From contig NC_086106.1 in the NCBI RefSeq assembly GCF_963921235.1, positions 22,444,144 through 22,508,000 of the forward strand: a stretch of DNA of 63,857 nucleotides. The letters run 5' to 3'. Shown here piece after piece: positions 893-63,857 of the stretch. Under the pieces are notes generated by a model. The model was given only the letters and a program-made list of their open reading frames with translations. It was not told where the DNA came from and made no database searches. The DNA comes from Mobula hypostoma. Lineage: Eukaryota. The translations under genes were made by a program, and so were the position numbers. Every line of letters begins with the position of its first letter. Positions within the stretch are counted from its first letter, which is position 1.

Positions 893-917
893 AATATATA
901 TATATATATATATATAT
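893..917. repeat. (TA)n microsatellite
   Basis: Direct run of atatatat... Confidence 0.9.
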
Positions 918-2768: not shown

Positions 2769-2769
2769 A

Positions 2770-15915: not shown

Positions 15916-16061
15916 NNNNNNNNNNNNNNNNNNNNNNNNNNNNNNNNNNNNNNNNNNNNNNNNNNNNNNNNNNNNNNNNNNNNNNNNNNNNNNNNNNNNN
16001 NNNNNNNNNNNNNNNNNNNNNNNNNNNNNNNNNNNNNNNNNNNNNNNNNNNNNNNNNNNNN
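15916..16061. other. Assembly gap (N run)
   Basis: Run of n. Confidence 1.
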
Positions 16062-16812: not shown

Positions 16813-18220
16813 GTACTTTCAGTAGTTGCATATCTACTGCTTAATTTAGAAACATATTTAGTTTAATTATTGAGATGCAATGCAGAATAGTGTATCTCAA
16901 TTTCGTCCACTTTAATCCGCGCTGCCAAGCCAGCACGACTGACAATACACTAATAACAGGAAAATTTATAATGGCGATTAAAAATACTAATTTATTTGTG
17001 CTGTGGATTTAAGTGGATCATCCAGAGGAATATTACTACTTCCACAAGGCGTACGTAATCGTGTCGGAATTGAATTTTGATCTCCCACGCATCGAGCACG
17101 AATAGCGCAGTAAATAAATGGACCATTCATTTGAAATAATGTCTTGTTTTTTTAAGACAGCTCAGTGCGAAAGTTGCTGTTGCTTAGAGTGGATAAAACA
17201 ATAATCTGTGGGTGGTCTTTGACAAAGGAACAGTGATGAATTAGTGGATATTCAAACGGTTTTTCTAGTTTTTGTTTAATAGTTCCTGGTCTTGAGCATC
17301 CTGTTTCGAAAGTATACGTTACTGTAAGTGGAGTTAAATACAGTTAATTATATTTACATTTACAATTAGATGCATTGCAGAAAGGCTGAATTCATTTCCA
17401 TTAACTTTGATTAGATCTATGGGGAACACCAGTTGTCATAGTAGCCAAAAATAAAGGGTGGTATTTTTAATTCACCGTCAACCAAATACTAAATATGCAT
17501 CAATGCATTCTTTCCAAGATGGAAGATAGTTACGCAAACCATTCTGATGGGAAATTGTTCAGAATACAAAGCAAGAATGAAACAAGAAACGCCTAAACTG
17601 ATGACTATACGCAGATGCGTGTGGTGGCTTGTAGGTGAACTCGTGATTAGGACCAGAACCACACAGAAAAGACTGATTCGCTAAAATAGGGCTCTGTTTA
17701 CAGTAGCATCTGTACCACCAAACTGGTAGTCAGCTATGAACTAAGTGCTTCGTGTTTGTTCAAACATTTTTTGTTACTTGGATGACATCATTGTTAACGT
17801 TAGGTTGATGAGGACAATCACACAAAGTGGTGAATTCTTTAAATTTAGCATCTTTTTTTGTTTTTTTTTGTCGTCGCATCATTGATGCCCAACTACCACA
17901 AAAGCGTGCTGACAAACTTCAAACAGTGGTGGATGACTCAAGGAGAAGGGTGTGTCGCAGTGGCAGTCCATTTTAAACTTTACCAACTACGATAACAATT
18001 TACTATCTCACCTGCTTACTGTGCCCTACCTCATCAACCAGTTACCATAGAAGTAGCAATGGAGAAAGAAGTGTGAGGAAACCTACACCAGATCTCTCGA
18101 GTTTCTTCCCTCTCCATCTCCTGCGGAGAAAGACCACAACCCACATCAGAATACGTCACAAAATCTCTCCATCCGGCGTATTCTAGAATTTTCCACCAAT
18201 TCCACCATCTTGATTGGATG

Positions 18221-18688
18221 ACATAGAAACATAGAAACATTGAAAATAGGTGCAGGAGCAGACCATTCGGCCCTTCGAGCCTGCACCGCCATTCGGTATG
18301 ATCATGGCTGATCATCCAACTCAGAACCCCGTACCCGCACTCTCTCCATAACCCCTGATCCCTATCGCTACAAGGGCCGTATATAACTCCCTCTTAAACA
18401 TCGGCAATAAACTGGCCTCAACTGTTTCTTGTGGCAGAAAATTCCACAGATTCAGCATTCTCTGTGTAAAGAAGTTTTTCCTAATCTCGGTCCTAAAAGG
18501 CTTCCCCTTTATCCTCAAACTATGACCCCTCGTTCTGCACTTCCTCAACATCGGGAACAATCTTCCTGCATCTAGCCTGTCCAATCCCTTTAGGGTTTTA
18601 TATGTTTCAATAAGATCCCCCTGTCAGTCTTGTAAATTCCAACGAGTATAAGCCCAGTTGATCCAGTCTTTCATCATATGAAAGTCCT
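18221..18688 (-). mobile_element. CR1-clade LINE short 3' copy
   Basis: ORF 18321-18584 (MDRLDAGRLFPML..TRGHSLRI); (AGAAACAT)n tail; same subfamily as 1943-2768. Confidence 0.92.
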
Positions 18689-19979
18689 GACACGACATTC
18701 ATAAGTATGAACATCACATCTCGTTACATTTTACGGTAACCCAGACACTACCAGCAGAACACACGGTTTCTACAGAAAGCCATATAAGGAAATACCCTAC
18801 AACATCAGAAGTAAAATTTTAACCAGGGTATTACACGGTCCCCACAAATAAAAATTCATATCCTCATAACTTTGAAAATTATCAACCGATCATTAATAAA
18901 ACAGTTTTCAAAGAAATGCTGTGATGCCATAACTACCAATCTATTTGTAAATGGCAGTGGAGAATCTCCCTCAGGTATTAAACTTAACTCCCTGTTTCGT
19001 CGGTGCATCAAGGAGAGCATATTACGGGGATTCCTGACAGTTTAAATCTTCCTGATACACTATCGGTTTCTCCAGTCTCAGACATTCCTTGGGATCTTTC
19101 CTATCTACCTGAAGCAGCTTGCCAACTCCGCTCTCTATGCCACTTAGCTAGCTCAGTTTCAAGATCGACTACTTTGGAGCACGTTTTTCTTTCATTGTCC
19201 AGTCACCATTCTGCCTGCGAACTGTTAGCAGCACCACCTTCGCCCGTCCAACCTCTCTAGCCATAACCGATTTAATATGGGGTGGCTCGGAATTCTCTTC
19301 ATTAATTGTTGGGAAATTTGTTTAATGTAAGCAATACCACAAAGCCATTTTCTCATCCTTTGAGTCCTTCCAATATTCAATCGTTACGTCTGCTCAGGAC
19401 CCCTCTACTGATTGTATTTCTGTGTTCCCATTGTTGTGTAGACCTCCTGCTAGGCGTAGCGCCTATGCCGTGCTCCTGTTCAACACGTGCCTCCTGTATC
19501 AGAGGTAAAAACATCGTTCCGATGGCATATTTTGACTGGTTCAGTCCTGTCTTTAAGCTTCAACTGGAAAAGTGGCTCATTTGGCAATGACTCTCCACAA
19601 CGAAAGGCGTGGCTATCCAGCGGTAGGCCAATTTATGATTTTCTGGCAGCATCAACGTTCGGATTCAAACTCTGTCTCCAGGCATCAGGTCGGAAAATAT
19701 AATATTTTGATCATATTTACTTTGTTTCCTTGATTCTACATGGTAGTAGAGAAATTTGCCAATTCATTAGCCTGTTGCAAATCTTTTCACACGTACATAA
19801 GATTTGTCTCCTTTCACTTCCCCGCCAGTTTAAAACCATACGTCTACAAGTATTACCGACTCGCGCCCAAACATCAAATGTCATGGCAAAGTTCTTGTAG
19901 CTTAATTCTGTATTCAGTAGCTACCCTACATAATACAGTTGTTACCATAAACAAGAGGCGTGCCTTTAGAACGTAGATC

Positions 19980-29652: not shown

Positions 29653-29785
29653 CAGACACCTCGAAAACAATACTTTCTCTCTAGAACAACAAAGGAAACT
29701 GCCTCTGAAAATCAAACATGCTCTATGCGTTGGAAGCACAAACATCATGCATTTTTTCTTCTCCATCCGTTCTATCACGAAACCT

Positions 29786-30217
29786 ATGCTCAACTGTCTT
29801 TGGCCATTACTGATCAATATCTTGACTGCTCCCGGTGAGTGTCTGATTCAATGCTGGTTTTGAGTTTGATTCACTTACAGATTTATCAACGTCTTTGTCA
29901 TGTGTTGTAGGAACCGTTGCCGTTGATTTAATATCCCAGTCTCCGCCTGAGTTAATGGTTGGAGAACGACGAACTTTAATAATGACCTGCACCTACCCTG
30001 AAGCATATGATGGTTATACGGCATTCTGGTACATGGAATTTCCCGAAGAAGCGCCGAGATATATACTGAAGATATTCCCCAGCGGGTCCATAGACCGGTC
30101 AGCACAAACTTCGAATCGGTTTTCGGCTGTTTATCAGAGATCGAACAAGAAGTTACATTTAACCATCTCCGGCGCCCTTGTCTCTGACTCTGCCTTGTAT
30201 CTCTGCGCAATGACGAG
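29786..30217 (+). CDS. TRAV/TRDV: T-cell receptor V alpha/delta gene segment, apparently functional (leader exon 29786-29834, intron 29835-29910, V exon 29911-30217)
   Basis: Leader ATG..MLNCLWPLLINILTAP-G followed by GTGAGT donor; acceptor tgtgttgtAG at 29910; phase-1 splice gives an open V exon GTVAVDLISQSPPELMVGERRTLIMTCTYPEAYDGYTAFWYMEFPEEAPRYILKIFPSGSIDRSAQTSNRFSAVYQRSNKKLHLTISGALVSDSALYLCAMTS with the canonical Cys, Trp and DSALYLC motifs, directly followed by an RSS. Confidence 0.93.
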
Positions 30218-30256
30218 CACGGTGCAGCAGACAAGCAGTGGATCCGTACAAAAACT
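30218..30256 (+). other. 23-bp-spacer recombination signal sequence of the V segment
   Basis: Heptamer CACGGTG (30218-30224), 23-nt spacer, nonamer ACAAAAACT (30248-30256). Confidence 0.93.
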
Positions 30257-35500: not shown

Positions 35501-36867
35501 GTCCGGGTCTTTATAGACCAGTAAGCCTTACGTCTGTGGTGGGAAAGCGGTTGGAAAAGATTCTTAGAGATAGGATCTATAGGCATTTCGAGAATCATGG
35601 TCTGATCAGAGACAGTCAGCGTGGCTTTTTGAAGGGCATATCGTGTCTAACAAGCCTGGTAGAGTTATTTGAGGAGGTGACCAGGCATATAGATGAGGAT
35701 AGTGCAGTAGATGTGGTCTATATGGATTTTAGTAAGTTCCGCACGGTCGGCTTATTCAGAAAGTTAGTAGGCATGGGATCCTGGGAGGTTTGGCCAGGTG
35801 GATTCAGAATTGGCTTGCCTGCAGAAGGCAGAGTGTGGTGCTGGAGGGAGTACATTCAGATTGGAGGATTTTGACTAGTGGTGTCCCACAAGTATCTGTT
35901 CTGGGACCTCTACTTTTCGTGATTTTTATTAAGGACCTGGATGTGGGGGTAGAAGGGTGGGTTGGCAATTTTGTACACGACTCAAAGGTTGGTGGTGTTG
36001 CATATAGTGTAGACGATTGTCAAAAATTGCAGACAGACTTTGATAGGATGCAGGGATGGGCTGAGAAGTGGCAGATGGAGTTCAACCCAGAGAAGTGTGA
36101 GGTGGTACACTTTGGAAGGACAAACTCCAAGGCAGAGAACAAAGTAAATGGCAGGATACTTGGTAGTGTAGAGGAGCAGAGGGTTCTCGGGGTACATGTT
36201 CACAGATCCCTGAAAGTTGCCTCACAGGTGGATAGGGTTGTTAAGAAAGTTTATGGTGTGTTAGCTTTCATAAGTCGAGTGATAGAGTTTAAGATTCGCG
36301 ATGTAATGATGCAACTCTATAAAACTCTGGTTATGCCACACTTGGAGTACTGTGTCCAGTTGTGGTCACCTCACTATAGGCAGGATGTGGAAGCATTGGA
36401 AAGGGTACAGAGGAGCTTTACCAGGATGCTGCCTGGTTTAGAAAGTTTGCATTACGATCAGAGATTAAGGGAGCCAGGGCTTTACTCTTTGGAGAGAAGG
36501 AGGATGAGAGGAGACATGATAGAGGTGTACAAGATAAGAAGAGGAATAGATAGAGTGGATAGCCAGCGCCTGTTCCCCAGTGCACTACTGCTCAGTACAA
36601 GAGGACATGGCTTTAAGGTAAGGGGTGGGAAGTTCAAGGGGAATATTAGAGGAAGGTTTTTTACTCAGAGAGTGGTTGGTGCTTGGAATGCACTGCCTGA
36701 GTCAGTGGTGGAGGCAGATGCACTAGTGAAGTTTAAGAGACTACTAGACAGATATATGGAGGAATTTAAGTTGGGGGCTTATATGGGAGGCAGGGTTTGA
36801 GAGTCGGCACAGCATTGTGTGCCGAAGTGCCTGTACTGTGCTGTACTATTCTATGTTCTATGTTCTG
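32600..36867 (+). mobile_element. Near full-length CR1-clade LINE (5'UTR; ORF1 ~32975-33915 with zinc finger, coiled coil and SGNH esterase; ORF2 ~34050-36800 with APE and RT; (TTCTATG)n tail), multiply disabled
   Basis: ORF1: CLLCEMW..CQKCKRL..LEQQLDDLRLIRE and RRAVVIGDSILGGADRRFC..LPGAR. ORF2: [50 protein letters not shown]. Contains stops and frameshifts. Confidence 0.95.
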
Positions 36868-48200: not shown

Positions 48201-48633
48201 CTCCTCCTAGCTTGAGGGAGGGCTTATTAACTCATCCCGCCTACCTGCCGTCATGATTAGGGAAGAGACTGAGTTCCGTCACGAATGGTCTAAGAAGTAA
48301 GACTTTCTGTACCGGCTTAGGGCACACGTGTCAACATCGATAAATACAAAATAAGCACCTACTGTTGTCGAAATATCGTCCAGTTCATGGCGAAGGCGAC
48401 AGATGCATTCGCTTATAGGACATCTGCATTACAGATATTGAACGTTAGGGGGCCATGGGAGGGACTTAATCATCCGGTAGAAACAGAATTAAAAGCACCA
48501 GTTGACCCTCAGAATGCTGTCCTGTAGAGGTCACTGTCCAACTCCGAAGTAAATTCAAACTTTAAATTTGAAGATTGTGAGCTCCATTTCCTCGTTACTT
48601 AAGAAATCTTCCCCGCTGACGAGGGGCGTCTTT

Positions 48634-49018
48634 ATGTTTTTCACACTAGGGCTCTGCATGTTAGTTTCTCTACGTGATTCGCCACTGACCCAAGTTCACT
48701 TTCCCATCTTTTTTTTAATTCACCCTTCATTGAGTTAGATAGTGACTCAGAGTCCATCGACTGTAAACTTGAAGTATTGTCATTCCGTTACTATCGCCTG
48801 CAGTTTCCTACCACCATCTTCTGGTGAATACCACTTTGTGAATGGAAAATTCTTCAAGCAGACCCAGTCACCGGCCGAAGGGAAGGAGAAGGCCACCGAG
48901 GGGTGATTTGTTACTAGGATTAAGAAAATTAACATGCAGTTTTCTTTGGAAATTCGGGATCTCGGAGTGGAAGACAGCGGCATCTGTTACTGGCATGTTG
49001 TGTACAGACTTGGTGAAG
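48634..49018 (+). pseudogene. NTCRV: NAR-TCR V (VNAR-like) segment, pseudogene; probable leader exon 48634-48673, V from ~48739
   Basis: Frame from 48742: VTQSPSTVNLKYCHSVTIACSFLPPSSGEYHFVNGKFFKQTQSPAEGKEKATEG*FVTRIKKINMQFSLEIRDLGVEDSGICYWHVVYRLGE. FR2 to FR3 spacing is short, as in VNAR (no CDR2 strand), and FSLEIRDLGVEDSG resembles the IgNAR motif FSLRINDLTVEDSG. Stop TGA at 48904; second canonical Cys is TGG at 48991. Leader candidate MFFTLGLCMLVSL followed by GT; its acceptor is degenerate. Confidence 0.85.
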
Positions 49019-49056
49019 CACAATGATGGTCGTCAGATTCCCGTTGCACAAAAAGT
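49019..49056 (+). other. RSS of the NAR-TCR V (22-nt spacer)
   Basis: CACAATG (49019-49025), 22-nt spacer, ACAAAAAGT (49048-49056). Confidence 0.88.
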
Positions 49057-49365
49057 TTTGCTGTAGGTTATTCCTGAAGCAGAGAGAGCAGAATGGATCT
49101 GCTGGTAAAGTAAACAGACCCACCTCGCTCCAAACGTCCTACAGTCTAGATTATAGTCAGTTTCTTGTGTTTTACTTACAGTCTATGTGTTCCCTCCCGG
49201 ATTCTGCTGCGTTCCCAGAGGCTTGCGTCTATGAATGTCGACAGGGAATTAACAAAAACACATTCCCGTCGGGAAATACATGTGGATTCGATCCTAGGCA
49301 CTTTGTTCAGGAAAAGACCATCGTTGGGAATGTGCTTTACCCTCGCCTCACATCCCTTCCCAGGG

Positions 49366-49438
49366 GGGCTTTGAAATTGCCCTGAGGAATTGTGTATACT
49401 TTGGGAGACACTCAGTGCAAGAGATCTGAAGAAAATTA
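49366..49438 (+). other. NTCRD: D segment (49395-49410, TATACTTTGGGAGACA) flanked by degenerate 12/12 RSSs
   Basis: 5' side: GGGCTTTGA, 13 nt, AATTGTG (49388-49394). 3' side: CTCAGTG (49411-49417), 12 nt, AGAAAATTA (49430-49438). It sits between the V and the J. Confidence 0.65.
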
Positions 49439-49769
49439 ATAACATTTAAATAAATAACTTAGTTAACTATGTATTCTATATGCCCTAATCAAAATTTACG
49501 AACTTGGCGATGGCCGCTCAGTTATCTGATTACATAAGTTTTATTTTTTATATTTCAGGTATATTTTGACGGACGCCGTTGCTGATTTGTTTCCTTTCTG
49601 AGTCAGTCTGCGGCGCGTGTACAGGCTTCAATTTAATGAGGCCCTGCTTTTTCAGATCATATCGACCCGTCAGGAAATTAGGAAAACTGCATGCTATCTG
49701 TTGAATTAACGTTAGAGGAAACATTGGGCATCCTATTCTGACGTTTGTTATGCAGATTCACGTGACTGT

Positions 49770-49872
49770 AGTTGTTGTATTCGGGAGATTGAAAACAGGT
49801 TCAGTGTGTATATGTGGAAGTATGATAATCTTGTTGGAGCAGGGACAAAGGTCACGGTCAGTCCCGGTATGT
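49770..49872 (+). other. NTCRJ: J segment (coding 49809-49866) with 23-RSS and splice donor
   Basis: AGTTGTTGT (49770-49778), 23-nt spacer, CAGTGTG (49802-49808); open frame YMWKYDNLVGAGTKVTVSP-G; phase-1 donor GTATGT at 49867. Confidence 0.9.
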
Positions 49873-50025
49873 ATCCACAAACATCGCCGTTTATTCTAAT
49901 TTTTCCCCATATTCAGTTTCATTTAATAGATGATCGAATAATCAAAAAAATCTTTAATTTTTAAAAATCCAATCTAAAATCTCGTTTCTGCAAATTGTGT
50001 CAGAGGCGTCGTTAGCACACGGTGT

Positions 50026-51455
50026 CTTAGACAATAGTCAGTAGACAATAGACAATATAATATAGGCAATAGGTGCAGGAGTAGGCCATTCGGCTTTTCG
50101 AGCCAGCACCGGCATTCACTGTGATCATGGCTGATCATCCACAATCAGCACCCCGTTCACGCCTTCTCCCCATATCTCTTGACTCCGCTATTTTTAAGAG
50201 CTCTATCTAACTCTTTCTTGAACACATCCAGAGAAATGGCCTCCACTGCTTTCTGAGGCAGAACATTCCACAGATCCACAACTCTCTGGTGAAAAAGTCT
50301 TTTTTCCCCTCAACTCCGTTCTAAATGGCCTACCCCTTATTCTAAAATTGTGGCCTCTGGTTCTGGACTCCACCAACATCGGGAACATGTTTCCTGCCTC
50401 CAGCGTGTCCAACCACTTAATAATCTTATTTGTTTGAATCAGATCCCCTCACATCCTTCTACATTTCAGTGTATACAAGACCAGTCGCTCCAATCTTTCA
50501 ACATATCACAGTCCCTCCAACCCGGGAATTACCCTCTTGAACCTCCGCTGAACTCCCTCAATAGCAAGAATGTTCTTCCTCTAATTTGGATACCAAAACT
50601 ATACACAATACTTCAGGTGTGGTCTCACCAGGGCCCTGTACACTGCAGACGGACCCCTTGTCTCCTATACTCAATTCCCCTTGTTATGAAGACGAACAGG
50701 CGATTAGATTTCTTCCTTTCCTGCTGTACCTGCATGCCTACTTTCAGTGACTGATGAACAGGGACAGCAAGATCTCGTTGTACTTCCCCAGTTCCTAACT
50801 TGATACCATTCCAATAGTAATCTGCCTTCCTGTTCTTGCCACCAAAATGGATAACCTCACATTTGTCCACAACAAACTACATCTGTCATGCATCTGCCCA
50901 CTTACCCAACCTGTTCAAGTCATCCTTCTTATCTCAACATCCTCCGCACATTTCACACTGCCGCCCAGCTTTGTGTCATCTGCAAATTTGTTAATTTTAC
51001 CTTTTATCCCTTCATCTATATCATGTATATATATATAGTAAATAGCTACGGTCCCAGCACCGAGCCCTGAAGTACCCCATTAATCACGGCCTGCCTTTCT
51101 AAAAATAACTAGTTAACCCCTACTCTTTGTTTCCTGTCTGCCAACCAACTTACAATCCATGTCTGTATCCTACCCCCAATAGCGTGTGCTCTAATTTTGC
51201 CCACTAATCTCCTATGTGGGACCTTATCAAAGGCTTTCTGAAAGTACAGGTACACTAGATCTACCGGCTCTCCCTTGTCCCTTGTCCATTTTCATAGTTA
51301 CATCCTCAAAAACTTCCAGAAGATTAGTCAAGCATGATTTTCCCTTTGTAAATCCAAGCTGACTCGGACCGAGCCTGTTACCGCTATCCAAATGTGCCGC
51401 TATTTCATCCTTTATAATTGTGTTCAGCATCATCCCCACCACTGATTGCAGGCTA
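50026..51455 (-). mobile_element. CR1-clade LINE, 5'-truncated and internally deleted, (TTGTCTA)n tail
   Basis: ORFs 51227-51442 (GFTKGKSCLTNLLE), 50625-50870 (KCEVIHFG) and 50203-50412 (TRGHNFRI). Confidence 0.9.
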
Positions 51456-51469
51456 ACTCGAGTCAGTCA

Positions 51470-51610
51470 AACAGATTCTGGCTTGTCATCCTGTTGAAGG
51501 GTCTCGGCCTGAAATATTGACTGTATTCGTTTCCACTGATGTTGCCTGGTCTGCTGAGTTCCTGTGTGCGTTGCCAAGATTTCCAGCATCTGCAGGTTTT
51601 CTCTGGTTTA
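51470..51610 (+). mobile_element. Penelope-like terminal fragment
   Basis: tcctgttgaagggtctcggcctgaaa..gcctggtctgctgagttcc..gatttccagcatctgcag. Confidence 0.6.
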
Positions 51611-52016
51611 TGGCTTGTCATCTGCTGAGTGGACACAGGGGCACTGAATCAGCTCCAGTTTGGACGCTGTGCCACACGGCCCCTGACACTCGGGTGGAGC
51701 GCACCAACTCCGAAGCTTTTCTGTTGAGCAGTTGTAAACAGGCAACACCATGATTTGAGGCTTTATCCTCCTACAACTGAGGTCATGCAGCTTCCCTGCC
51801 ATTTGCCAATAAATCACTGAATCGGACTTTCAGCACTCAACATTAACAATGTTCAACAGGATCTTCCAATAATTATTATTTAATTGTCATGATTGCTTAT
51901 AAGATCAGCCACACAAAACAAAATCAAATACTTGCAATAAAAAAACAAAATAATTTGATACTGTATTTTGCTCATCAAGTTACCTATTCCATCTTTCTTC
52001 GCATACTTATTCACGC

Positions 52017-52560
52017 ATAATCATCATCATCATCAGGTGCCGTGCCCAGATTGAGCTTTTTCTGCCTAGGCCAGACACTCCTGTTTTGGGTCAAGTGGAT
52101 TAATTCATTGGTATTCATTTCCGGCTCTCTGGCTGCTGTCTCCATCATCATGACTTTGTCTTCCTCTTGCTTTCTTCCCTTCAATCTTTCCCATAATTAC
52201 CGTGCATTCTAACTGGTCTTTCCTAATCACATGTCCAAAGAAGTTGCCTTGCCTTTTCATGATCTCATACATTATTTTTTTGTGTGTGTGTGTGTTTGCT
52301 CTGTTCATGATATCATTATTAGATATTCGTTTCGTCCATGATATTTTTTGTAATCATCCTCAAGGACCACGACTCTGCTGCTACAATCCGTTTCCTCATG
52401 TTACTAGATATTGCCCAACATTCTGAACCATATAACATAACTGGATAAACGTAACATTTCAGTACTCTGAGGCGGGTTGTAATGCCTAGTTTAGTCTTCA
52501 AGCATAATAACCCATTAAAAACACTTCTACTGAAGTTCATCTCTTACGTTTGAAACGTTG
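52017..52560 (-). mobile_element. RTE-clade (BovB-like) LINE 3' fragment
   Basis: RLRVLKCYVYPVMLYGSECW; FFGHVIRKDQLE..GKIEGKKARGRQ; (ATG)n tail. Confidence 0.85.
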
Positions 52561-53134
52561 TACAGTCTACAACAGGTATCCTTTTTCTGTAATGTCCAGC
52601 AGCAAGTGATCTCCATTTAATAGTTCTTCGATATTATTGAAAGTCACATAATATAAGGGAGTAGAGTGAAAACAGGGCAGATAGTCTAGTAAATTAACTA
52701 GACCACTGAATATATACTGTGAAGTTTGCTGTTTTGCAACAGTTGTAGAGTGCAGTACAATAATATTATAAATTACTTTAGGAAATTATATAAATTAAAT
52801 TAGCGCATAAAGAGAGCAATATAGTGTTGTAATGTTCATCGGTTAAATCTCCATTCAGAAATCTTATGGCGCAGGGGAAGAAGCTGTCTTAAACATTGAG
52901 TTAGAAGCAAAGCTATGAAGAAAATTGCAGGGATCTTGAGAAAGAAGGACCAGGTGTGGCAAGGTTCAAAACTTAAGATTAAGGACGAGGCAAAAGTAAC
53001 TTTGCTATTAGTCTGCTCTTTATAGGTCATGGACAATCCATAGGAAGGAGCACTCTGGGAGCTTAGAGAAATAAAATAATTTATAATTTACGCAACTTTC
53101 CTATCAAACTCAATCTTGATAGAACAATACTAGA

Positions 53135-54730
53135 TGGCAAGGTGGCGCCAGTGCACCACTGCAACATTCTCAAAGTTACATACAATACCTTGAAATATAC
53201 TTTTAGAATTGCTCTCACTGTAACCTGCATTTAATTTTCCTTTGTTTAAGCAAGGCACTTTTAATTTGATTTAATGGACTACAGATTTTACTGTCTTCTG
53301 GAGGATTTGCAAACTGAACTCTCAAACAAGCAGCCACAGGACCTTTAAGTGGACGAAAGCACATTGCCATTGCCAGAAGATGGGGCGGGGACACGATTCC
53401 AAGCCAGACTGGAACAAAAGGAACAAGAACCCATCTACCCAGCATCTTGATATCAAACACGAAGTCATTAGCAAACAAAATTGAGGACCAGATGATAAGT
53501 TTCATGTATCAAACGAAAATGAGAGTGTGTTGTGTTCTGTTTTACCAAGAGATGACTTACATCCAACATGCCAAAAACAGCAATGAGTCTCAAAGGCTTC
53601 TCGACACAGAGGATAGACCGAACACATGATTTGAACAAAGCAAAAGGTGGAGTTGTGTGTTTCATGATAAACTCTGTGATACTCCAATGTAGAGGTTTGT
53701 CAAACTCGTATTCCCCTGACCGTGAATACCCAATGATCAAATGTTGTAGGTTCTATTTACCAAGGGCGGTCTCATCTGTGATCCTGACCACAGTTTGCAT
53801 ACAGCCAGCGGCTGACTATGGTCAAGCACTTGAGACACTGCATGAGGCAGTCACCGAACAGCAGTCCATCCTAACACATTTCATATCCGAGTCTGGAATT
53901 CCAATCAGACTTGTTTAAAGAATTCCCTGCCTAATTATCATCAGCATATAACCTAGTGCACCAGAGGTCTCAACACACCAGACCACTGTCATACTAAAGT
54001 AAACAATGTCTCCTGTTCCATGCACAGACTACCTGTTGGGAAATCTGATCACTTGACTGTCCTTCACCTACCTGCATACAGGCAGAGACTAAAGAGCAAG
54101 ACTCCAGAGATTACGACAATGAAAAGACTATCACGTGAGGCAGAGGATCGGCAACAGGATTAATATAAGTTGGTGGACTGGGCCATCTATGGATCTGAAT
54201 GAATACACCCGTTGTAGATGAGTACGTCCCCACAAAATCAGTCTCCCCTAGTCATAAGCCTCCGATGAACCAAGATATCTGCAATCTGTTGAGGTACAAA
54301 TCAGAGGCATTCAAGTCTGGTGATCAAGAAAATTACAAGAGGTCCAGGTAAGGTCTCTTAAAAGCCATTTATGTGCAAAGTGTTAATTCCAGACTAAACA
54401 TGAATCAATGAAGCATTCTCTGCTCACTTTGACCATCACATCTCCCACATCCTCCGATGACCCTATAATTTCAGTCTGAGGCCATCGTGCGAGCATCCTT
54501 TAGGACGGTGAACTTATGGAAAGCATTCAACCCAGATGGAGTACCTGGTCAGCTACTAAAGATCTAGCTGATCAACTGGCTGCAATGTCCATTAATATTT
54601 TTAACCTCTTGATTTGGCAATCTGATGTACCCACTTGTTTCAAGCTGGATTCAATTACACAGGTGCACAAGAAGAATGTAGTAACCTGCCCCAATGACTA
54701 TCATCCAGTAGCACTTAAATCCACAGTCGT
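53135..54730 (+). mobile_element. Rex1/Babar-like LINE 5' part (APE and RT N-terminus), decayed
   Basis: LPSILISNTKSLANKIED; KAKGGVVCFMIN; RFYLPRAVSSVILTTV; KSDHLTV; NDYHPVALKS. Confidence 0.75.
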
Positions 54731-55039
54731 TTCTGGATGTGCTATTACAGTAAACGTATTCAACACTTCGGGAACTTTCGCATTGGTGTTGCTGCTTCAA
54801 ACTTTAATAAATATGAAGAAAAACTCAAATTAGACAGATATCATATGGAAAATAAAACACAAACCGCAGGAGATCTATGAGCCACCAAGATGATGCGGGA
54901 AATAATAAAACACGTTTTCTCCAATGCATTCTCAAGTAAGATGGAGAATTCCATGCACCCTGATTAAAACAATTCAGAAAAGGGAAGAGAACAGAAAGAA
55001 CTTTTATTTCGGAAACCTCAGATGCTTAGCATTTAAAGG

Positions 55040-57140
55040 TTGCATGGATGAACTACACCAATTGTTCATCCCAGTTTGGCAAATGAATAAATCAAGGAAG
55101 GTAGTGCACCCGTGGCTGACAAGAGAAATTAGGAATAGCATCAATTCCAAAGAAGAAGCATACAAATTAGCCAGAGAAAGTAGCTCACCTGAGGACTGGG
55201 AGAAATTCGGAGTTCAGCAGAGGAGGGCAAAGGGCTTAATTAGGAAGGGGAAAAAGATTATGAGAGAAAACTGGCAGGGAACATAAAAACGGACTGTAAA
55301 AGCTTTTATAGATATGTAAAAAGGGAAAGACTGGTAAAGACAAATGTCGGTCCCCTGCAGACAGAAACAGGTGAATTGATTATGGGGAGCAAGGACATGT
55401 CAGACCAATTGAATAATTACTTTGGTTCTGTCTTCACTAAGGAGGACATAAATAATCTTCCAGAAATAGCAGGGGACAGAGGGTCCAGTAAGATGGAGGA
55501 ACTGAGCGAAATACATGTTAGTATGGAAGTGGTGTTAGGTAAATTGAAGGGATTGAAGGCAGATAAATCCCCAGGGCCAGATGGTTTGCATCCTAGAGTG
55601 CTTAAGGAAGTAGCCCAAGAAATAGTGGATGCATTAGTGATAATTTTTCAAAACTCGTTAGATTCTGGGCTAGTTCCTGAGGATTGGAGGGTGGCTAATG
55701 TAACCCCACTTTTTTTAAAAAGGAGGGAGAGAGAAACCGGGGAATTATAGACAGGTTAGCCTAACGTCGGTGGTGGGGAAACTGCTGGAGTTACTTATCA
55801 AGGATGTGATAACAGCACATTTGGAAAGCGGTGAAATCATCGGACAAAGTCAGCATGGATTTGTGAAAGGAAAATCACATCTGACGAATCTCATAGAATT
55901 TTTTGAGGATATAACTAGTAGAGCGGATAGGGGAGAACCAGTGGATGTGGTATATTTGGATTTTCAAAAGGTTTTTGACAAGGTCCCACACAGGAGATTA
56001 GTGTGCAAACTTAAAACACACGGTATTGGGGGTAAGGTATTGGTGTGGGTGGAGAATTGGTTAGCAGACAGGAAGCAAAGAGTGGGAATAAACGGGACCT
56101 TATCAGAATGGCAGGCAGTGACTAGTGGGGTACCTCAAGGCTCACTGCTGGGACCCCAGTTGTTTACAATATATATTAATTACTTGGATGAGGGAATTGA
56201 ATGCAGCATCCCCAAGTTTGCGGATGACACGAAGCTGGGTGGCAGTGTTAGCTGTGAGGAGGATGCTAAGAGGATGCAGGGTGAATTGGATAGGTTGGGT
56301 TAGTGGGCAAATTCATGGCAGATGCAAATTAATGTGGATAAATGTGAAGTTATCCACTTTGGTAGCAAAAATAGGAAAACCGATTATTATCTGAATGGTG
56401 GCCGATTAGGAAAAGGGGAGGTGCAACGAGACCTTGGTGTCATTATACGGCAGTCATTGAAAGTGGGCACGCAGGTACAGCAGGCGGTGAAAAAGGCGAA
56501 TGGTATGCTGGCATTTATAGCGAGAAGATTCGAGTACAAGAGCAGGGAGGTACTACTGCAGTTGTACAAGGCCTTGGTGAGACCACACCTGGAGTATTTT
56601 GTGCAGTTTTGGTCCCCTAATCTGAGGAAAAACATCCTTGCCATACAGGGAGTACAAAGAAGGTTCACCAGTTTGATTCCTGGGATGGCAGGACTTTCAT
56701 ATGAAGAAAGACTGGATGAACTGGGCTTGTACTCGTTGGAATTTAGAGATTGAGGGGGGATATGATTGAAACGTATACAATCCTTAATGGATTGGACAGG
56801 CTAGATGCAGGAAGATTGTTCCCGATGTTGTGTAAGTCCAGAACGAGGGGCCGCAGTTTGAGGATAGAGGGGAAGCCTTTTAGGACCGAGATGAGGAAAA
56901 ACTTCTTCACACATGGGAATAGTGAATCTGTGGAATTCTCTGCCACAGGAAACATTTGAGGCCAGTTCATTAGCTATGTTTAAAAGGAAGTTAGATATGG
57001 CCCTTGTGGCTACAGGGGTCAGGGGGTATGGAGGGAAGGCTGGGTTCTGAGTTGGATGATCAGCCATGATCATAATAAATGGCGGTGCAGGTTCGAAGGG
57101 CCGAATGGCTTACTCCTGCACCCATTTTCTATGTTTCTAT
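55040..57140 (+). mobile_element. CR1-clade LINE, 5'-truncated, relatively young
   Basis: KSPGPDGLHPRVLKE; [13 protein letters not shown]; KFADDTKL; RPHLEYFVQFWSP; tttctatgtttctat tail. Confidence 0.95.
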
Positions 57141-57679
57141 ATTTCTTAAACAACCATCTGACCAGTCAACATTTCTCAGTCTCAGTACTGTGATGAACAT
57201 TTTATAATGCAAGAGGCTAAAACTACTAGCGGCAAAATGTATAGGGGGATAACATCTCGATAAAACTTCTGTCAATTGGGTAAAGAAAAAAAAAACATCT
57301 GATCATCATTGTTACGATTTGTTATTCAATAAGGAATTGCACTCCAGAGATTTACAGAACCAAGAAAATTATTTTGGCAGTTTATGAGTTCGGCGGCTCT
57401 CTCAAATTGCTCCTTGAATTCAATTTATTTCTTCCACGTAGATTAACAAAATATGATGCGATTTCTTTATTATAGCAACATTTCCCCATTATATAATTGT
57501 CGTTAACTTTTTATATCGCAGTAGTTCCTTGTAATAATTGGTAACGGGAGTAAAGATTGCTTACACATATTTCAAATGAAACAGGTTTGCCTGAAAATAA
57601 AGTCTCTTTAGCTTCTTTGGGAAGCTTTTTCTAACGGTCATCGATAAACCAGTCATGATCTTCCTTTATATTCCTGCAG

Positions 57680-57920
57680 AATCCATTTCTCCAGCGTCTC
57701 AGAGATCTGAACTATAAACAACACTTGCCGACACTTTCACTTTAAGCTGTGAATATCATGTGTATTGCACAACACATTACACTGGTATCGGCAGCCTCCA
57801 GGGCAGGTACCCATGTCGCTGCTTCAGAAACAAACAGTTGGATCACAAGCAAAGAAAGACAGGAATAGCATGGAAACGAATTACTGGTTTTCTCGATTCT
57901 GATAACAAAATCAGCCGGTT
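57680..57920 (+). pseudogene. STCRdV: Leaderless 'supporting' TCR delta V exon of NAR-TCR, pseudogene, 3'-truncated
   Basis: Polypyrimidine tract and acceptor ttcctttatattcctgcAG at 57679. Phase-1 frame (E)SISPASQRSEL*TTLADTFTLSCEYHVYCTTH, then a -1 frameshift to LHWYRQPPGQVPMSLLQKQTVGSQAKKD, then RITGFLDSDNKISRL. Extra Cys in CDR1 at 57766. No leader exon was seen upstream. The second Cys and the RSS are absent. Confidence 0.85.
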
Positions 57921-60900
57921 GTTGTAACAGATCAGCGGGTGACCGATTAGAATTATTGCCTTGACAGCAGATCGAGCAGGCTGAGACGAAGTCGCGGATG
58001 CCATTCCCCATGGTGCGGGGGGTGGGGGGAGGGGCGAGGGGGGGTGTGCTCGCCAGAGCCACCGACTGATGAAAGCCTGAGAACACCTAGTTCCAGGCTG
58101 ACAAGATAACAGGGAAGAATGACCGGACTACAGTACCTGTGAGCGGACAGAGCTGGGAACATAAACACGGTTACTGGGGCATTGAGTAGGCGCTGCTTCG
58201 CTCTGTTGAGCAGCAAGCAGAATGGATTCAATATGCACAGGGGTCCAGTCTCACACCGACGGATTACTTGATAAAGATTCTGAGGAAATCGCAGAGGAAA
58301 TTCCAGACGAGTTAAGTCACAGGGTTCCGACGTGATTCTGACGGTACTGACGGGGATCTGTAGTGGTGAATACCGGGGTGATTAACGAATATTACTGATG
58401 CAGAACTTCCGATGAACAACAAGCAAAGCACCTCTGTAACCCGGAGACTTTTTTGGTAGCCAGCTCCAAACAAGAATCAGGCGCCGAAATCAATGTGCCC
58501 AATGGAACACAGGAATAACGGTATAACCGTTTTACGAATCAACAGACCGGATCGTGAACCGGAATGCTGACTTCAAGGACCGGACCCTGACAGTACCCAC
58601 CGTAACCCACCAACGGGACCATCCTGACGATCAACAGACTTGCCTGGATTATCGGCGACCGATCAGGATGGTTTGGTTCCAACAAGAGGGGACCCTGGAT
58701 GGTAAGAGTTAAAAGACAGTGCCTGTGAAGCTCGGTCGATATTTTGACTAGTCCGTTCTGTTGCAAAGAGGGCGCTGGTAACGGACCCAAATGCAAGATA
58801 CAGACACTGAAGTACGAAGAACTGCGAAATTAGTTTATCAAGAATGTAAGGGAGTAGGAAACCAAGCATTGATCAGAGGGTAATCCAGGAGAGAGCAAAA
58901 GCAAAAGCGGGAAGAAACGTAGATGGACAGGGACATATGCCCTGGAGAGGACTGGGATTCAGTTTCTAGGCTAGGACTTCGACTAGGAACACTGGACACG
59001 GAGGTGAACCTTAGAACTAGGAGTCTGGACACGGAGTCCAACCCAGAAACTGGACAGGAACTCGGAACCTGGGTCTAGGCTAGGTCTCGGGACTCCGATC
59101 TTGGCTAGGACTCGGGACTAGGATGCACTCGACTGGAAATTGGATCGGACTCGACACAGGACTGGGACGCAAAGCCTTGACATGGACTGAACTAGGGTCT
59201 TGACGCTTGGACACGACTCGGCCCTTGACTCAGGCTAGACACAAACACAAAACACTGAGCCAGGCCTCTTCCTTGGATACAAGACGTTGAGCCGGGTCCT
59301 CTTTCAGACATAGAACACAGAGCCAGGACTCCTCCTTAGGTACAGGACATAGGGCCGAGACTTTTTCCATACACAGATAACTGAACACCAAGAGATAGAT
59401 CTCTACTCAATGTAGTGGTAATCGGCCGGAAATACCCAGCGGAGGCAAGGACAGAAAGAAATGGCTACCAACTCAACATATCGGCAAACGGTCGTACCTA
59501 CCAAGCGAAGGCGAGGACACAAAGAAACATTTCCAAACAACGATAGACTGTACCTAATCTTGACGCGACAAGGGTGCAGTCTCACTCCGGCAGCTTACTT
59601 GACTGGGATTCTGACGAAGTTGCAGACGAGGTTCCAGACGTGGAAACGCATGGGGTTCCGAAGGGATTCTGACGGTACTGTCGAGGAACTGCCGTGGTAA
59701 CTGCTGGGGTGAGTGACGGCTGTTAGTGATGCTGATTTTCCGATGAAGAACCAGCAAAGAGCCGCTGTAATGCGGAGCATTTTATATAGCCAGCCCCAAA
59801 CGAAAATCACGCGGATCAATCAAGACGCCCAACGGAACACAGGGAAAACTGAATAGCCGGAGTACGGGACCCGACGGTGAAATGGAATGTCAAATTCACA
59901 CATCGGACCGCGACACCCACTGCCCTGAACCCACGAGACAGTGAGCAGAGAGAATGACATCCGATACGTTAGGGGTCTCAGGGAAGCAAAATCATCTGGA
60001 GAGTGCATCAAGTTTTTCATTCTTGGAACCAGGGTGGAAATACAGAGTAAAATTGAATCTTCAGAAAAATAGGGGTCAACGATCTTGACGGGAATTGAGA
60101 CTCCAGACACTACGGATATATTCCAGATTCTTATGGTTATTCCGCACCAAGTATCGCACCTAGGATCCCTGCAACCTCTACCTCAACTCCACCAGCGCTA
60201 GAACGAGCAAGTCCCGTTTTCCGATCGCTTAATTCTGCTCCGTCAGAGTGAGGAGCTGAGAGAAGAAGGCGCAGGTGCGCACTCAGAGAGAACAGCTCCT
60301 ACGCCAATGTCAGACGCATAAACCTTCACAATGAACTGCCCGTCCGTGCCGGTTGAATCAGGATGGGGGCAGGGTTGGAACGTTGCATTAGGACTGAGAA
60401 TGTTTTTTTTTCAGCAGCAGGGGAGCAAGAGAAACTGACAGCAGATCAGGAAACAGTAGTGATTGGTGCACCACTGTTCTGTGATGTCTAAAGAGCGGCC
60501 ATAGAACTTATTAAATTACAAGAAGCTTTGCTACTCCGATAGACTAAGTTCGGGGTCACTCGACCACCGCCTTGCCCTTCTGTTGGTTCATCTGAATGGA
60601 ACTGCCTGAAATTACATACCCCGGGAGGAGAATGTATTGCGATGAAACTCACATCTCTCAGCCTTCACAAACAGCTGTTTCTCCAGAAGGCACTGGAAAA
60701 CTTTGGGGACGTGACCTGTGTGTTCAGGAATAGATTTAGCAAAAACAATCTAAGTGTCTTCGAGATAGACAGAAACAATTTGGTTCAACATGTACCTGAG
60801 ATCTTCATTTCCCAGGGATTTGAAGACGAGGGGGCATTGGTGCGACCTAATGGTATAACCAGGTATCTGCAGCGGCCAGAGGTGGTTTGCAGGCCGTCTT

Positions 60901-62587: not shown

Positions 62588-63857
62588 CTGTCAGGGAGAT
62601 GAAGCAGAGACAAATACCAGACCAAGTGCAGTTGTTGTTGTTTTCTTGTCTTTTTATTGAGTGACAAATCCAGAGGGGCAACGAAGTCGGCGTTAAAGCT
62701 CAGGCGAATATCAGAACATCCAGACAAATCCAGAGTTCAGAATCGGGAAACCGGCTGACTCGATACCCAGAAGGTCATAGTATTGATAGGAATGCCAGAA
62801 AGGCTCTTGGACTGGACTCGGCTGTGGACTCAGACTAGACACAGGACACAAAATCCTCCTCCTTGAGTACAGGACATAGGGCGGGCACTCTTCTTATACA
62901 CGGAGACAGAGCCAGGAAACCTCCTTGTGTACAGGACATAGTGCGGTGACTCTTTCTATACACAGATCACTGAAAACGAAGAGATAGTTGTCCACACAAG
63001 GTAGTGGCAAACGGCGGATCTACCAAGTGGAAGCGAGGACACAAAGAGACAGTTCCAAAATCAAGGTAGCAGCAAACGGCCGGAACTACCAACTGAAGGC
63101 GAGGATAGAAAGAGATAGGTCCAAACAACGATAGACTGCACATTATCCTGACGCGATAAGGGTCCAGTATCACTCCTGCCGCTTACTTGACGGCGATTCT
63201 GACGAAGTCGCCGATGAGGTTCCAGACGAGGTTATTCACGGGGTATCGACGGGATTCTGAAGGTAGTGACGCGGAACTGCCGTGTTGGCAGCCACGGTGA
63301 CTACCGTGGTGACTGCCGGGGAGACCCTCGAATATTACTGATGCCGAGCTTCCGACGACGAACCAACAAAGAGCCGCTGTAACCCGGAGTCTGTTTATGC
63401 AGCCAGCCCCAACCAAGAATCAGGCGCCTCAGTCATTGCGTCCAACGGAACTCAGGAAAAACGGATTAACCACAATACCGAATCCAAGGACTAGATAGTG
63501 AACCAAAATGACGACTTCACGGACTTGATCGTAACAGTAACGTCCCTCCCTGTCTGGGACCCCCCGGCGATCAACAAGCTTGCCCCGATTATCGGTGACC
63601 CGAGCAGGATGGGTGGTGGGGTGTTCAGCAAGAGGGGACAGTGGAAGGCGAGATTTAAAAGACAGTGTCTGTGTCGCTGGGTCCATGTTTTGACTGGTCC
63701 GTTGTGTTGAAAAGGGGGCGCTGGTAGTATACCCACATGTAAGACACAGACACTGAAGTACTAGTAGCTGGACAATGAGTTTATCAAGAATGCAAGGGAA
63801 GTCGGGACGCAAGGATTGATCAGAGGGTAATCCCGGAGAGAACAAAGCAGAAGCGGG
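62588..63857 (-). mobile_element. Long 5' LTR of the gypsy element (continues past the window end)
   Basis: On the minus strand it ends ...CCCTGACA immediately before gtacaatctgcccagtATGGATCC; internally repetitive. Confidence 0.7.

What the first reader, a model, noticed from the sequence alone, without database searches (positions are those of the whole stretch)
48634..57920. Complete NAR-TCR-type double-V cassette (VNAR-like V, D, J, then a leaderless TCRdelta V) hidden among TEs
Seen: a VNAR-like V with an RSS, a 12/12 D, a 23-RSS J with a phase-1 donor, and 7.8 kb downstream a TCRdelta-like V exon that starts at a phase-compatible acceptor with no leader. Established: in sharks, NAR-TCR encodes a TCRdelta chain with two independently rearranged V domains, an IgNAR-like VDJ spliced onto a leaderless supporting Vdelta. 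Inference: this is such a cassette, now a pseudogene. It is invisible in the ORF track. The system is known; this copy, and possibly this species' version of it, may be unannotated.
Basis: partly seen in the sequence, partly recalled or inferred. Interest (0 to 1): 0.85.

Follow-up and report, generated by a model that had tools for sequence, protein, structure and literature searches.

The report
Dead NAR-TCR double-V gene cassette
This is a decayed, transposon-riddled germline copy of the shark-and-ray "NAR-TCR" gene unit, in which an antibody-like V domain with its own D and J is spliced onto a leaderless T-cell-receptor delta V. The kind has been known since 2006 and the same genome holds intact copies, so this copy is ordinary.

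Summary
All five parts are present in order on the + strand: leader, NAR-type V with 23-class RSS, D with 12/12 RSS, J with 23-RSS and a phase-1 donor, and a leaderless supporting V at a phase-1 acceptor.

Each part is homologous to the matching part of double-V gene models and loci from sawfish, skates and sharks. The V is 47-49% identical at E 1e-18 to 1e-23. The supporting V matches at 41 of 84 residues. The D and both flanking RSSs align across species. Both non-canonical cysteines and the missing FR2 tryptophan are present.

A transcript of a paralogue in an RNA run of the same species is V-D-J joined. It is spliced from the homologous J donor (49866) onto a sequence nearly identical to 57680 onward.

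The copy is dead:
- start codon and leader-intron acceptor lost;
- two stops and Cys to Trp in the V;
- a crippled D heptamer;
- a 7.8-kb intron swollen by LINE pieces;
- one stop, two frameshifts and a 3' truncation at about 57921 in the supporting V, with no RSS.

The scan has already found intact, expressed cassettes 1.1-4.5 Mb away in this genome. This is a new pseudogene member of a known kind, of low interest.

The parts
48622..48673 (+). Leader exon of the NAR-type V. The ancestral ATG is now AGG (48622-48624) and the first in-frame ATG is at 48634 (MFFTLGLCMLVSL). A GT donor follows at 48674, phase 1.
   Evidence: tblastn aligns residues 2 onward of the conserved leader (MGILLVFTLC.CL..) of about 20 double-V models to 48625 onward. 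Leader scan.
48674..48724 (+). Leader intron, about 50 nt. The homologous acceptor CAG of sawfish is ACC here. A cryptic AG lies at 48741-48742.
   Evidence: Pairwise alignment with Pristis L001 and sequence reading.
48725..49018 (+). NAR-TCR-type V exon, a pseudogene. It carries the a-b loop Cys (TGT 48778-48780) and FFKQ in place of WYRK. Lesions are TAG at 48736-48738, TGA at 48904-48906 (CGA in sawfish), and the canonical second Cys changed from TGT to TGG (48991-48993).
   Evidence: 54/110 identity to P0005 and 42-46/88-97 to other models. tblastn E 1.7e-23. phmmer hit P0003 at E 9.5e-5 among 1.84 billion proteins. Nearly all of the 20 PDB hits of the FR3 piece are VNAR domains, though no E-value is below 0.06.
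49019..49056 (+). V recombination signal: CACAATG, 22-nt spacer, ACAAAAAGT (23-class).
   Evidence: RSS scan. The heptamer, the 22-nt spacer (shared start ATGG) and the nonamer align with sawfish and skate V-RSSs.
49367..49438 (+). D segment with 12/12 RSSs. 5' signal: GGCTTTGAA, 12-nt spacer, AATTGTG. Coding part: 49395-49410. 3' signal: CTCAGTG, 12-nt spacer, AGAAAATTA. The 3' heptamer has lost the essential CAC (CTC here; CACAGTG or CACAGCG in relatives).
   Evidence: Four-way alignment with L001, L002 (Pristis pectinata) and L003 (Amblyraja radiata) shows a conserved island exactly here. Local RSS scan.
49770..49808 (+). J recombination signal: AGTTGTTGT, 23-nt spacer, CAGTGTG.
   Evidence: RSS scan, aligned with GGTTCTTGT-23-CACTGTG of relatives.
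49809..49866 (+). J segment (..WKYDNLVGAGTKVTVSP), with donor G|GTATGT in phase 1. Val replaces the aromatic residue before GxG.
   Evidence: A paralogue's RNA contig ends its J match exactly at 49866 and continues into supporting-V sequence.
49867..57679 (+). Intron between J and supporting V, 7,813 nt. It is swollen by LINE pieces at 50059-51457 (- strand) and about 54516-57146 (+ strand; the reverse transcriptase match is at 55770-56300).
   Evidence: Pfam RVT_1 at 2.2e-19. Inverted repeats. Copies elsewhere in the window at up to 93% identity. From the coordinates found, the same interval comes to about 1.4-3.7 kb in sawfish and skate loci.
57680..57921 (+). Leaderless supporting TCR-delta-type V exon, a pseudogene. 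The acceptor is cctgcag|AA, phase 1, and the CDR1 Cys (TGC 57766-57768) is present in SCEYHVYC. Lesions are TAA at 57715-57717, a -1 frameshift at about 57764-57770, a +1 frameshift at about 57845-57865, and truncation after ..KISRL. The FR3 end, the second Cys and the RSS are missing.
   Evidence: Frameshift-aware alignment: 41/84 to P0018 and 43/85 to P0016, all ending at 57921. DNA alignment with L001. A paralogue's RNA and DNA contigs carry one extra base behind 57764. No leader candidate. No remnant of the 3' end elsewhere in the window.
57922..58265 (.). High-copy repeat that replaces the 3' end of the supporting V.
   Evidence: Summed DNA contig depth rises from about 50 to 385-3400 at 80% likeness, and many RNA contigs map here.

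Best explanation
The stretch 48622-57921 is a germline NAR-TCR cassette that has become a pseudogene.

How intact copies work (established knowledge plus evidence here on paralogues and orthologues):
- RAG joins the IgNAR-like V (23-class RSS) to its private D (12/12) and J (23-RSS).
- Independently, the downstream leaderless V-delta rearranges to D-delta/J-delta.
- The transcript is spliced leader, then NAR VDJ exon, then supporting VDJ exon, then C-delta.
- The result is a three-domain TCR delta chain whose distal V is held to the supporting V by a disulfide between the a-b loop Cys and the CDR1 Cys.

This copy descends from such a unit but cannot make the chain:
- The ancestral start codon and the leader-intron acceptor are gone.
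- The V has two nonsense codons and has lost its second canonical cysteine.
- The D 3' heptamer lacks CAC.
- LINE insertions stretch the J-to-supporting-V intron to 7.8 kb.
- The supporting V has a nonsense codon and two frameshifts, and a repeat cuts it off before its second Cys and RSS. It can therefore never be joined to D-delta/J-delta/C-delta.

Shown: homology of each part, the lesions, the TE content, and use of the homologous splice sites by an expressed paralogue. Inferred: that decay followed duplication of a working cassette (birth-and-death evolution), and that the copy is silent.
For: - Locus context: an intact conventional TCR V lies at about 29747-30217, with leader, Pfam V-set at 1.9e-9 and RSS CACGGTG-23-ACAAAAACT.
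- NAR V homology: phmmer hit to XP_051882926.1 of Pristis pectinata. tblastn E 1e-18 to 1e-23. 54/110 identity including leader remnants.
- Hallmarks from PMC1845163 are met.
- VNAR relation: nearly all of the 20 PDB hits of the FR3 piece are VNAR. The best single-domain hits of the intact homologue's N-terminal V are also VNAR, at 3.6e-12.
- D and RSS geometry is conserved across four loci.
- Supporting V: 41-43 of 84-85 residues identical to the second V of double-V models.
- Paralogue transcript: V 3' end, then 52 nt, then J ending at 49866, followed by AATCAATTTCTCCACCGTCTCAGAG. This compares with the window's 57680 AATCCATTTCTCCAGCGTCTCAGAG. A second contig covers 57679-57814.
- The family's C region matches human TCR delta C at 1e-11, against TCR alpha C at 2e-4.
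- The lesions and the truncation are documented.
- LINE reverse transcriptase lies in the intron.
Against: - No bona fide, author-named NAR-TcR or IgNAR germline sequence could be fetched for a direct tree. The link to 'NAR-TCR' rests on published hallmarks, on VNAR hits in the PDB and on misnamed RefSeq double-V models.
- The first 55 residues of the V have no hit in Pfam or the PDB on their own.
- Absence of a leader before the supporting V is weaker evidence than usual, because a LINE ends 544 nt upstream and could have displaced one.
- Silence of this copy rests on three small RNA runs of unknown tissue kept as contigs.
- The DNA contigs that reproduce the lesions may come from the same sample as the assembly.
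Confidence: 0.93

Rival explanations
1. Two unrelated V pseudogenes lie side by side by chance. One is an orphan NAR-type V-D-J. The other is a conventional TCR V-alpha/delta whose leader was removed by the LINE insertion.
For: The two parts are 7.8 kb apart with TEs between them. The window holds conventional V genes. A LINE ends 544 nt upstream of 57680.
Against: - The 57680 exon is 49% identical to supporting V domains, against about 31% over 36 residues to the conventional V at 30 kb.
- It carries the supporting-V-specific CDR1 Cys in the conserved SCEYSGFC context.
- Its first 25 bases match what an expressed paralogue splices directly to its J.
- Order, strand and splice phase are those of the cassette.
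Confidence: 0.03
2. A decayed IgNAR heavy-chain cluster (V, three D segments, J, C exons), not a NAR-TCR cassette.
For: The FR3 piece hits VNAR domains in the PDB. The J carries a 23-RSS, as Ig heavy-chain J segments do.
Against: - Only one D, with 12/12 RSSs, at the position conserved in NAR-TCR cassettes.
- FFKQ replaces the WYRK tryptophan and an a-b loop Cys is present. Both are NAR-TcRV hallmarks (PMC1845163).
- Identity is 47-49% to N-terminal V domains of double-V models, against only FR3-limited matches to VNAR with no E-value below 0.06.
- A supporting V follows the J, not C exons.
- Conventional TCR V genes flank it.
Confidence: 0.02
3. A working cassette whose apparent lesions are assembly or sequencing errors.
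For: The frameshifts sit in short stretches where a single-base error is conceivable. The window also has two N gaps elsewhere.
Against: - There are at least ten independent lesions of different kinds: substitutions creating three stops, Cys to Trp, loss of ATG and of the acceptor, a heptamer change, two indels, TE insertions and a truncation.
- Logan contigs of DNA run X1 reproduce the stretch with 0-2 differences.
- No RNA contig matches at 90% or more.
Confidence: 0.02

Closest known systems
NAR-TCR (NAR-TcR) doubly rearranging TCR delta genes of cartilaginous fish (Criscitiello, Saltis & Flajnik 2006, PNAS 103:5036; hallmarks restated in Venkatesh et al. 2007, PMC1845163)
   Same: - The layout matches: leader, IgNAR-like V, D, J, then a leaderless supporting V-delta, on one strand within a TCR V region.
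- The NAR V has the a-b loop Cys and lacks the FR2 Trp.
- The supporting V has the CDR1 Cys.
- The J carries a phase-1 donor facing a phase-1 acceptor.
   Different: This copy is non-functional. It has stops, frameshifts, a lost Cys, a lost start codon and acceptor, and a crippled D heptamer. Its intron is 7.8 kb and filled with LINE pieces. The supporting V is truncated and has no RSS.
RefSeq double-V gene models in sawfish, skates and sharks. Examples: XP_051882926.1 'immunoglobulin kappa light chain-like' and LOC127576469 of Pristis pectinata, LOC116981485 of Amblyraja radiata, LOC144601361 of Rhinoraja longicauda.
   Same: They share 47-49% protein identity over the N-terminal V and about 49% over the supporting V. 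The D, the RSS geometry and the splice sites are conserved at the DNA level.
   Different: Those are open reading frames in compact cassettes, about 2.2-4.6 kb from V end to supporting V. Their names are automatic and do not say NAR-TCR. Several models read through the V heptamer.
IgNAR V domains (VNAR; PDB entries such as 1VER, 2Z8V, 8HGI)
   Same: Both are short V domains without a CDR2-type C'-C'' region. They share the FR3 motif ..FSLxIxDLxVEDSG...
   Different: VNAR keeps the FR2 tryptophan, sits in IgNAR clusters with three D segments and C exons, and has no supporting V.
TCR mu of marsupials and monotremes
   Same: It is also a three-domain TCR chain, with an antibody-like distal V on a supporting V. 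A TCR mu chain appears among the weak PDB hits.
   Different: It is regarded as convergent (PMC3457774). Its distal V is VH-related, it lies in a different locus, and it belongs to a different lineage.

Membership tests
NAR-TCR cassette | N-terminal V related to IgNAR V | tested here: met
   Nearly all of the 20 PDB hits of the FR3 piece are VNAR, with no E-value below 0.06. The V is 54/110 identical to the N-terminal V of P0005, whose best single-domain PDB hits are VNAR at 3.6e-12.
NAR-TCR cassette | NAR V has its own leader peptide | tested here: met
   The leader remnant GVFMFFTLGLCMLVSL aligns to the conserved MGILLVFTLCVCL leader. The ancestral ATG is now AGG, and an in-frame ATG lies at 48634.
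NAR-TCR cassette | Cysteine in the a-b loop of the NAR V (PMC1845163) | tested here: met
   In KYCHSVTIAC the Cys aligns with the conserved (E/K)C of all models.
NAR-TCR cassette | Canonical Trp of the WYRK motif absent in the NAR V (PMC1845163) | tested here: met
   FFKQ aligns with FFK/FFR of all models.
NAR-TCR cassette | Private D and J between the two V segments, with RSS geometry V-23, 12-D-12, 23-J | tested here: met
   The geometry is present and aligns with two sawfish loci and one skate locus. The D 3' heptamer is degraded to CTCAGTG. The spacer pattern is taken from those aligned loci, because the founding paper (Criscitiello 2006) was not held and could not be read.
NAR-TCR cassette | J exon spliced in phase 1 onto the supporting V | tested here: inconclusive
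   The donor (49866|GT) and acceptor (AG|57680) are present and phase-compatible. An expressed paralogue uses the homologous sites. No transcript of this copy itself was seen.
NAR-TCR cassette | Supporting V-delta lacks a leader exon | tested here: met
   No hydrophobic ATG-started exon with a usable phase-1 donor lies in the 780 nt upstream. Caveat: a LINE ends 544 nt upstream.
NAR-TCR cassette | Conserved Cys in CDR1 of the supporting V (PMC1845163) | tested here: met
   SCEYHVYC aligns with SCEYSGFC/SGIC of all models.
NAR-TCR cassette | Supporting V has its own RSS for joining to D-delta/J-delta | tested here: not met
   The exon is cut off at about 57921 by a high-copy repeat. The FR3 end, the second Cys and the RSS are absent from the window. 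The feature has been lost, so this is a member by descent only, a pseudogene.
NAR-TCR cassette | Lies in the TCR alpha/delta locus and is expressed with C-delta | tested here: inconclusive
   Conventional TCR-type V genes flank it. No C exon is in the window. Homologous three-domain models carry a C region that matches TCR delta C best.
IgNAR cluster | Three D segments and IgNAR C exons after the J; FR2 Trp present | tested here: not met
   There is one conserved D. LINE pieces and a V exon follow the J. The FR2 reads FFKQ.

The most novel reading that the evidence does not exclude
The cassette is dead as a coding unit, but its V and J keep near-consensus RSSs (CACAATG-22-ACAAAAAGT and AGTTGTTGT-23-CAGTGTG). 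The novel reading is that it is still cut by RAG in thymocytes, or used as a gene-conversion donor. It would then contribute non-productive or hybrid joints with neighbouring NAR-TCR or TCR delta segments, so a 'fossil' cassette would still shape the repertoire or the stability of the locus.
Probability: 0.05. Interest if true: 0.35.

Novelty: new member of a known kind. Interest (0 to 1): 0.15.

Why it matters
This adds one annotated pseudogene to the NAR-TCR family of a ray-like genome. It shows concretely how such cassettes die: CpG-type nonsense mutation, loss of the structural cysteine, LINE insertion into the inter-V intron, and truncation of the supporting V by a repeat. That is useful for a complete map of the TCR alpha/delta locus and for counting working against dead cassettes (birth-and-death evolution). 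It does not change what is known about the receptor. A practical by-product is that public RefSeq annotations give these double-V genes misleading names (kappa light chain-like, lachesin-like, DSCAM-like, TCR alpha MC.7.G5-like). Name-based surveys will therefore miss them.

Tried and rejected
- Pfam and PDB searches of the first 55 residues of the V alone gave only chance hits, to DCC and Mmc1_C.
- The ESM Atlas gave only generic V-set neighbours, with a VNAR cluster at rank 53.
- The search for homologous proteins found no candidate with the intact conventional V. With the isolated NAR domain of P0005 it found one unnamed fragment. No author-named NAR-TcR or IgNAR germline sequence could therefore be fetched, and no tree against IgNAR was made.
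- My first reading of 57906-57965 as the FR3 end of the supporting V ('VVVTDQRVTD*NYC') was rejected. Homology stops at 57921 and the rest is a high-copy repeat.
- The pairwise MAFFT alignment placed the window's leader against the sawfish intron. Protein-level alignment showed that the leader is in fact homologous.
- CACTCAG at 49409 was my first choice for the D 3' heptamer. The four-way alignment favours CTCAGTG at 49411.
- A search for the missing 3' end of the supporting V elsewhere in the window found only the conventional V at 30 kb.
- Rfam found nothing in 47-63.9 kb.
- Pfam found nothing in ten flanking ORFs except a weak V-set match at 16.3-16.8 kb.
- PDB hits of the supporting V domain were dominated by multi-domain scFv constructs and did not discriminate TCR from Ig.
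- The J-to-supporting-V joint of this copy could not be tested directly, because the two sites are further apart than the 6,000-letter limit of read laying.
- The founding paper (PMC1458790) and the review PMC7909615 are not held.


Full report
**1. What is in the sequence**

The window is vertebrate-like DNA of about 35-50% GC, rich in repeats, with two N gaps.

It holds an intact conventional TCR-type V gene. This gene has a leader, an intron and a V exon up to 30217, followed by CACGGTG-23-ACAAAAACT. Pfam scores it as V-set at 1.9e-9. A second, degraded V lies at about 16.3-16.8 kb. The finding therefore sits among TCR V segments.

**2. The observation**

The parts on the + strand are as follows.
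- A hydrophobic leader, MFFTLGLCMLVSL, starts at ATG 48634 and has a GT donor at 48674.
- A V-like frame follows..VTQSPSTVNLKYCHSVTIACSF..KFFKQ..FSLEIRDLGVEDSGICYW...
- The V signal is CACAATG-22-ACAAAAAGT at 49019.
- A short element at 49395-49410 is flanked by weak 12-spacer signals.
- The J (..VGAGTKVTVSP) has AGTTGTTGT-23-CAGTGTG upstream and G|GTATGT after 49866.
- At 57680 a good acceptor (cctgcag|AA) opens a TCR V-like reading..TFTLSCEYHVYC..HWYRQPPGQ..RITGFLDSDNKISRL, spread over two frames.

The coordinates of the finding are correct.

**3. Homology**

*The V.* A phmmer search of the first 55 residues of the V against 1.84 billion representatives returned four proteins. One of them, P0003 (E 9.5e-5, 52% identity), is XP_051882926.1 of the sawfish Pristis pectinata, automatically named 'immunoglobulin kappa light chain-like'. 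It is a double-V protein.

Searching with P0003 gave 81 proteins. About 65 of them are the same double-V type (E 1e-52 or lower) and come from sawfish, skates, horn shark, catsharks, white shark, basking shark, smooth-hound, epaulette shark and others. Most are 'uncharacterized' or misnamed.

Back on the window, these models match the V at E 2.7e-18 to 1.7e-23, at 47-49% identity. A frameshift-tolerant alignment gives 54/110 identity to P0005. About 20 models also align their conserved leader (MGILLVFTLC.CL) to 48625 onward. The ancestral start codon therefore corresponds to AGG at 48622.

*The supporting V.* The 57680 exon aligns to the second V of the models at 41/84 (P0018), 43/85 (P0016) and 39/85 (P0011, a skate). 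Every alignment stops at 57921. The conventional V at 30 kb matches it at only about 31% over 36 residues.

*D and J.* I fetched the sawfish and skate loci (L001-L004) and aligned the V-to-J intervals. Most of the intergenic sequence aligns poorly, but three islands are conserved:
- the V-RSS, with a 22-nt spacer in all four;
- a D flanked by 12-spacer signals, exactly at the window's 49367-49438;
- the J with its 23-spacer signal.

The D is thus real by conservation, although its own signals are weak.

**4. Hallmarks**

Venkatesh et al. 2007 (PMC1845163), restating Criscitiello et al. 2006, list the hallmarks.
- NAR-TcRV has a leader, a Cys in the a-b loop, and lacks the Trp of 'WYRK'.
- The associated TcR-delta V lacks a leader and has a conserved CDR1 Cys.

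All four are met here: KYC..IAC, FFKQ, no credible leader within 780 nt upstream of 57680, and SCEYHVYC.

The FR3 piece of the V hits almost only VNAR domains in the PDB, weakly, with E from 0.06 upward. The intact homologue's N-terminal V has VNARs as its best single-domain hits, at 3.6e-12.

A full-length Mustelus model (P0052) reads NAR V, supporting V, J, C and transmembrane region. Its C region matches human TCR delta C at about 1e-11, against TCR alpha C at about 2e-4.

**5. Transcript evidence, from paralogues only**

No RNA run was listed as holding the stretch. At 80% likeness, one contig of RNA run X5 (same species label) covers these parts in turn:
- the V 3' end (48967-49008);
- 52 other letters;
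- the J (49825-49866);
- then AATCAATTTCTCCACCGTCTCAGAGTCCGG.

The window's 57680 onward reads AATCCATTTCTCCAGCGTCTCAGAGATCTG. Another X5 contig covers 57679-57814 at about 84% identity and has one extra base behind 57764.

So an expressed relative in this species is V-D-J joined and spliced from the homologous donor to the homologous acceptor. The window's copy lacks one base in CDR1. No RNA contig matches this copy at 90% or more. That is weak evidence of silence: the runs are small, kept as contigs, and of unknown tissue.

**6. Lesions**

Leader and NAR V:
- ATG changed to AGG at 48622.
- The homologous acceptor CAG is ACC at about 48722-48724.
- TAG at 48736.
- TGA at 48904, where sawfish has CGA.
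- The second canonical Cys changed from TGT to TGG at 48991.

D, J and intron:
- The D 3' heptamer reads CTCAGTG where relatives have CACAGTG or CACAGCG.
- Val replaces the aromatic residue of the J.
- The intron is 7,813 nt. By subtraction of the coordinates, the same interval comes to about 1.4-3.7 kb in L001-L003.
- The intron holds LINE pieces at 50059-51457 (- strand) and about 54516-57146 (+ strand). Pfam scores RVT_1 at 2.2e-19 there, and one copy elsewhere in the window is 93% identical.

Supporting V:
- TAA at 57715.
- A -1 frameshift and then a +1 frameshift.
- Truncation at about 57921 by a repeat whose summed DNA contig depth reaches 385-3400.
- Its FR3 end, second Cys and RSS are nowhere in the window.

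Contigs of DNA run X1 reproduce the sequence with 0-2 differences, but they may come from the assembly's own sample.

**7. Mechanism and verdict**

The stretch is a NAR-TCR cassette by descent that can no longer make a chain. Without an RSS the supporting V cannot be joined to D-delta/J-delta/C-delta. The distal V is also closed several times over.

The rival readings each get a few percent at most:
- chance neighbours;
- a decayed IgNAR cluster;
- assembly error.

**8. Novelty**

The kind has been known since 2006. Earlier notes of this scan report many intact and transcribed cassettes 1.1-4.5 Mb from this window in the same, ray-like genome. The paralogue contigs seen here agree with that.

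This is a new pseudogene member of a known kind, and its interest is low. One first-stage note on this very stretch (s1-144567) points to the matched non-canonical cysteines. I confirm that both lie at the family's conserved positions.

Noticed in passing
window 29747-30250 (+): An apparently intact conventional TCR V-alpha/delta-type gene. The leader is MHFFF..LTAP with a G|GTGAGT donor. The V exon ends ..DSALYLCAMTS. The RSS is CACGGTG-23-ACAAAAACT. Pfam scores it as V-set at 1.9e-9.
   Followed up: partly
window 16340-16825 (+), next to the N gap at 15916-16061: A second V-like stretch, ..VYWYTQSNGLSPQYLLQ..ADSVLYVCAM, with a weak Pfam V-set match (0.0043). FR1 is not recognisable and no CAC heptamer follows the Cys codon. 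It is probably a V pseudogene.
   Followed up: partly
L004 6693-7060 (Rhinoraja longicauda, GCA_053455715.1 CM130178.1): In this skate cassette the NAR-type V, D and J are contiguous in the genome assembly (..YYCKAKYKWDDMAAGRYWSTYYKDGTGTTVTVTG), with no RSS between them. It is either a germline-joined NAR-TCR VDJ or a rearranged allele captured by the assembly.
   Followed up: partly
P0003-P0070 (RefSeq models of sharks and rays): Double-V NAR-TCR cassettes are annotated under misleading automatic names: immunoglobulin kappa light chain-like, lachesin-like, DSCAM-like, Ig heavy chain Mem5-like, and T cell receptor alpha chain MC.7.G5-like. Several models read through the V heptamer into the RSS (..KHSDGP..) before a cryptic splice to the J.
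   Followed up: partly
window 1951-2776, 18225-18692, 35790-36800, 50059-51457, 54516-57146: Several copies of one LINE family lie in the window. The 3' ends at 56333-57146 and 1951-2769 are 93% identical, which suggests fairly recent activity within the TCR V region.
   Followed up: partly
window 58237-59872 and 62858-63857: Dispersed or tandem repeat blocks at 74-84% identity lie downstream of the truncated supporting V. No protein domain was found in their ORFs.
   Followed up: partly
same genome, from 1.25 Mb before to 4.53 Mb beyond the window (earlier notes): NAR-TCR cassettes are reported over a span of more than 5.7 Mb around this window. If all lie in one locus, the TCR alpha/delta V region of this genome is very large.
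   Followed up: no
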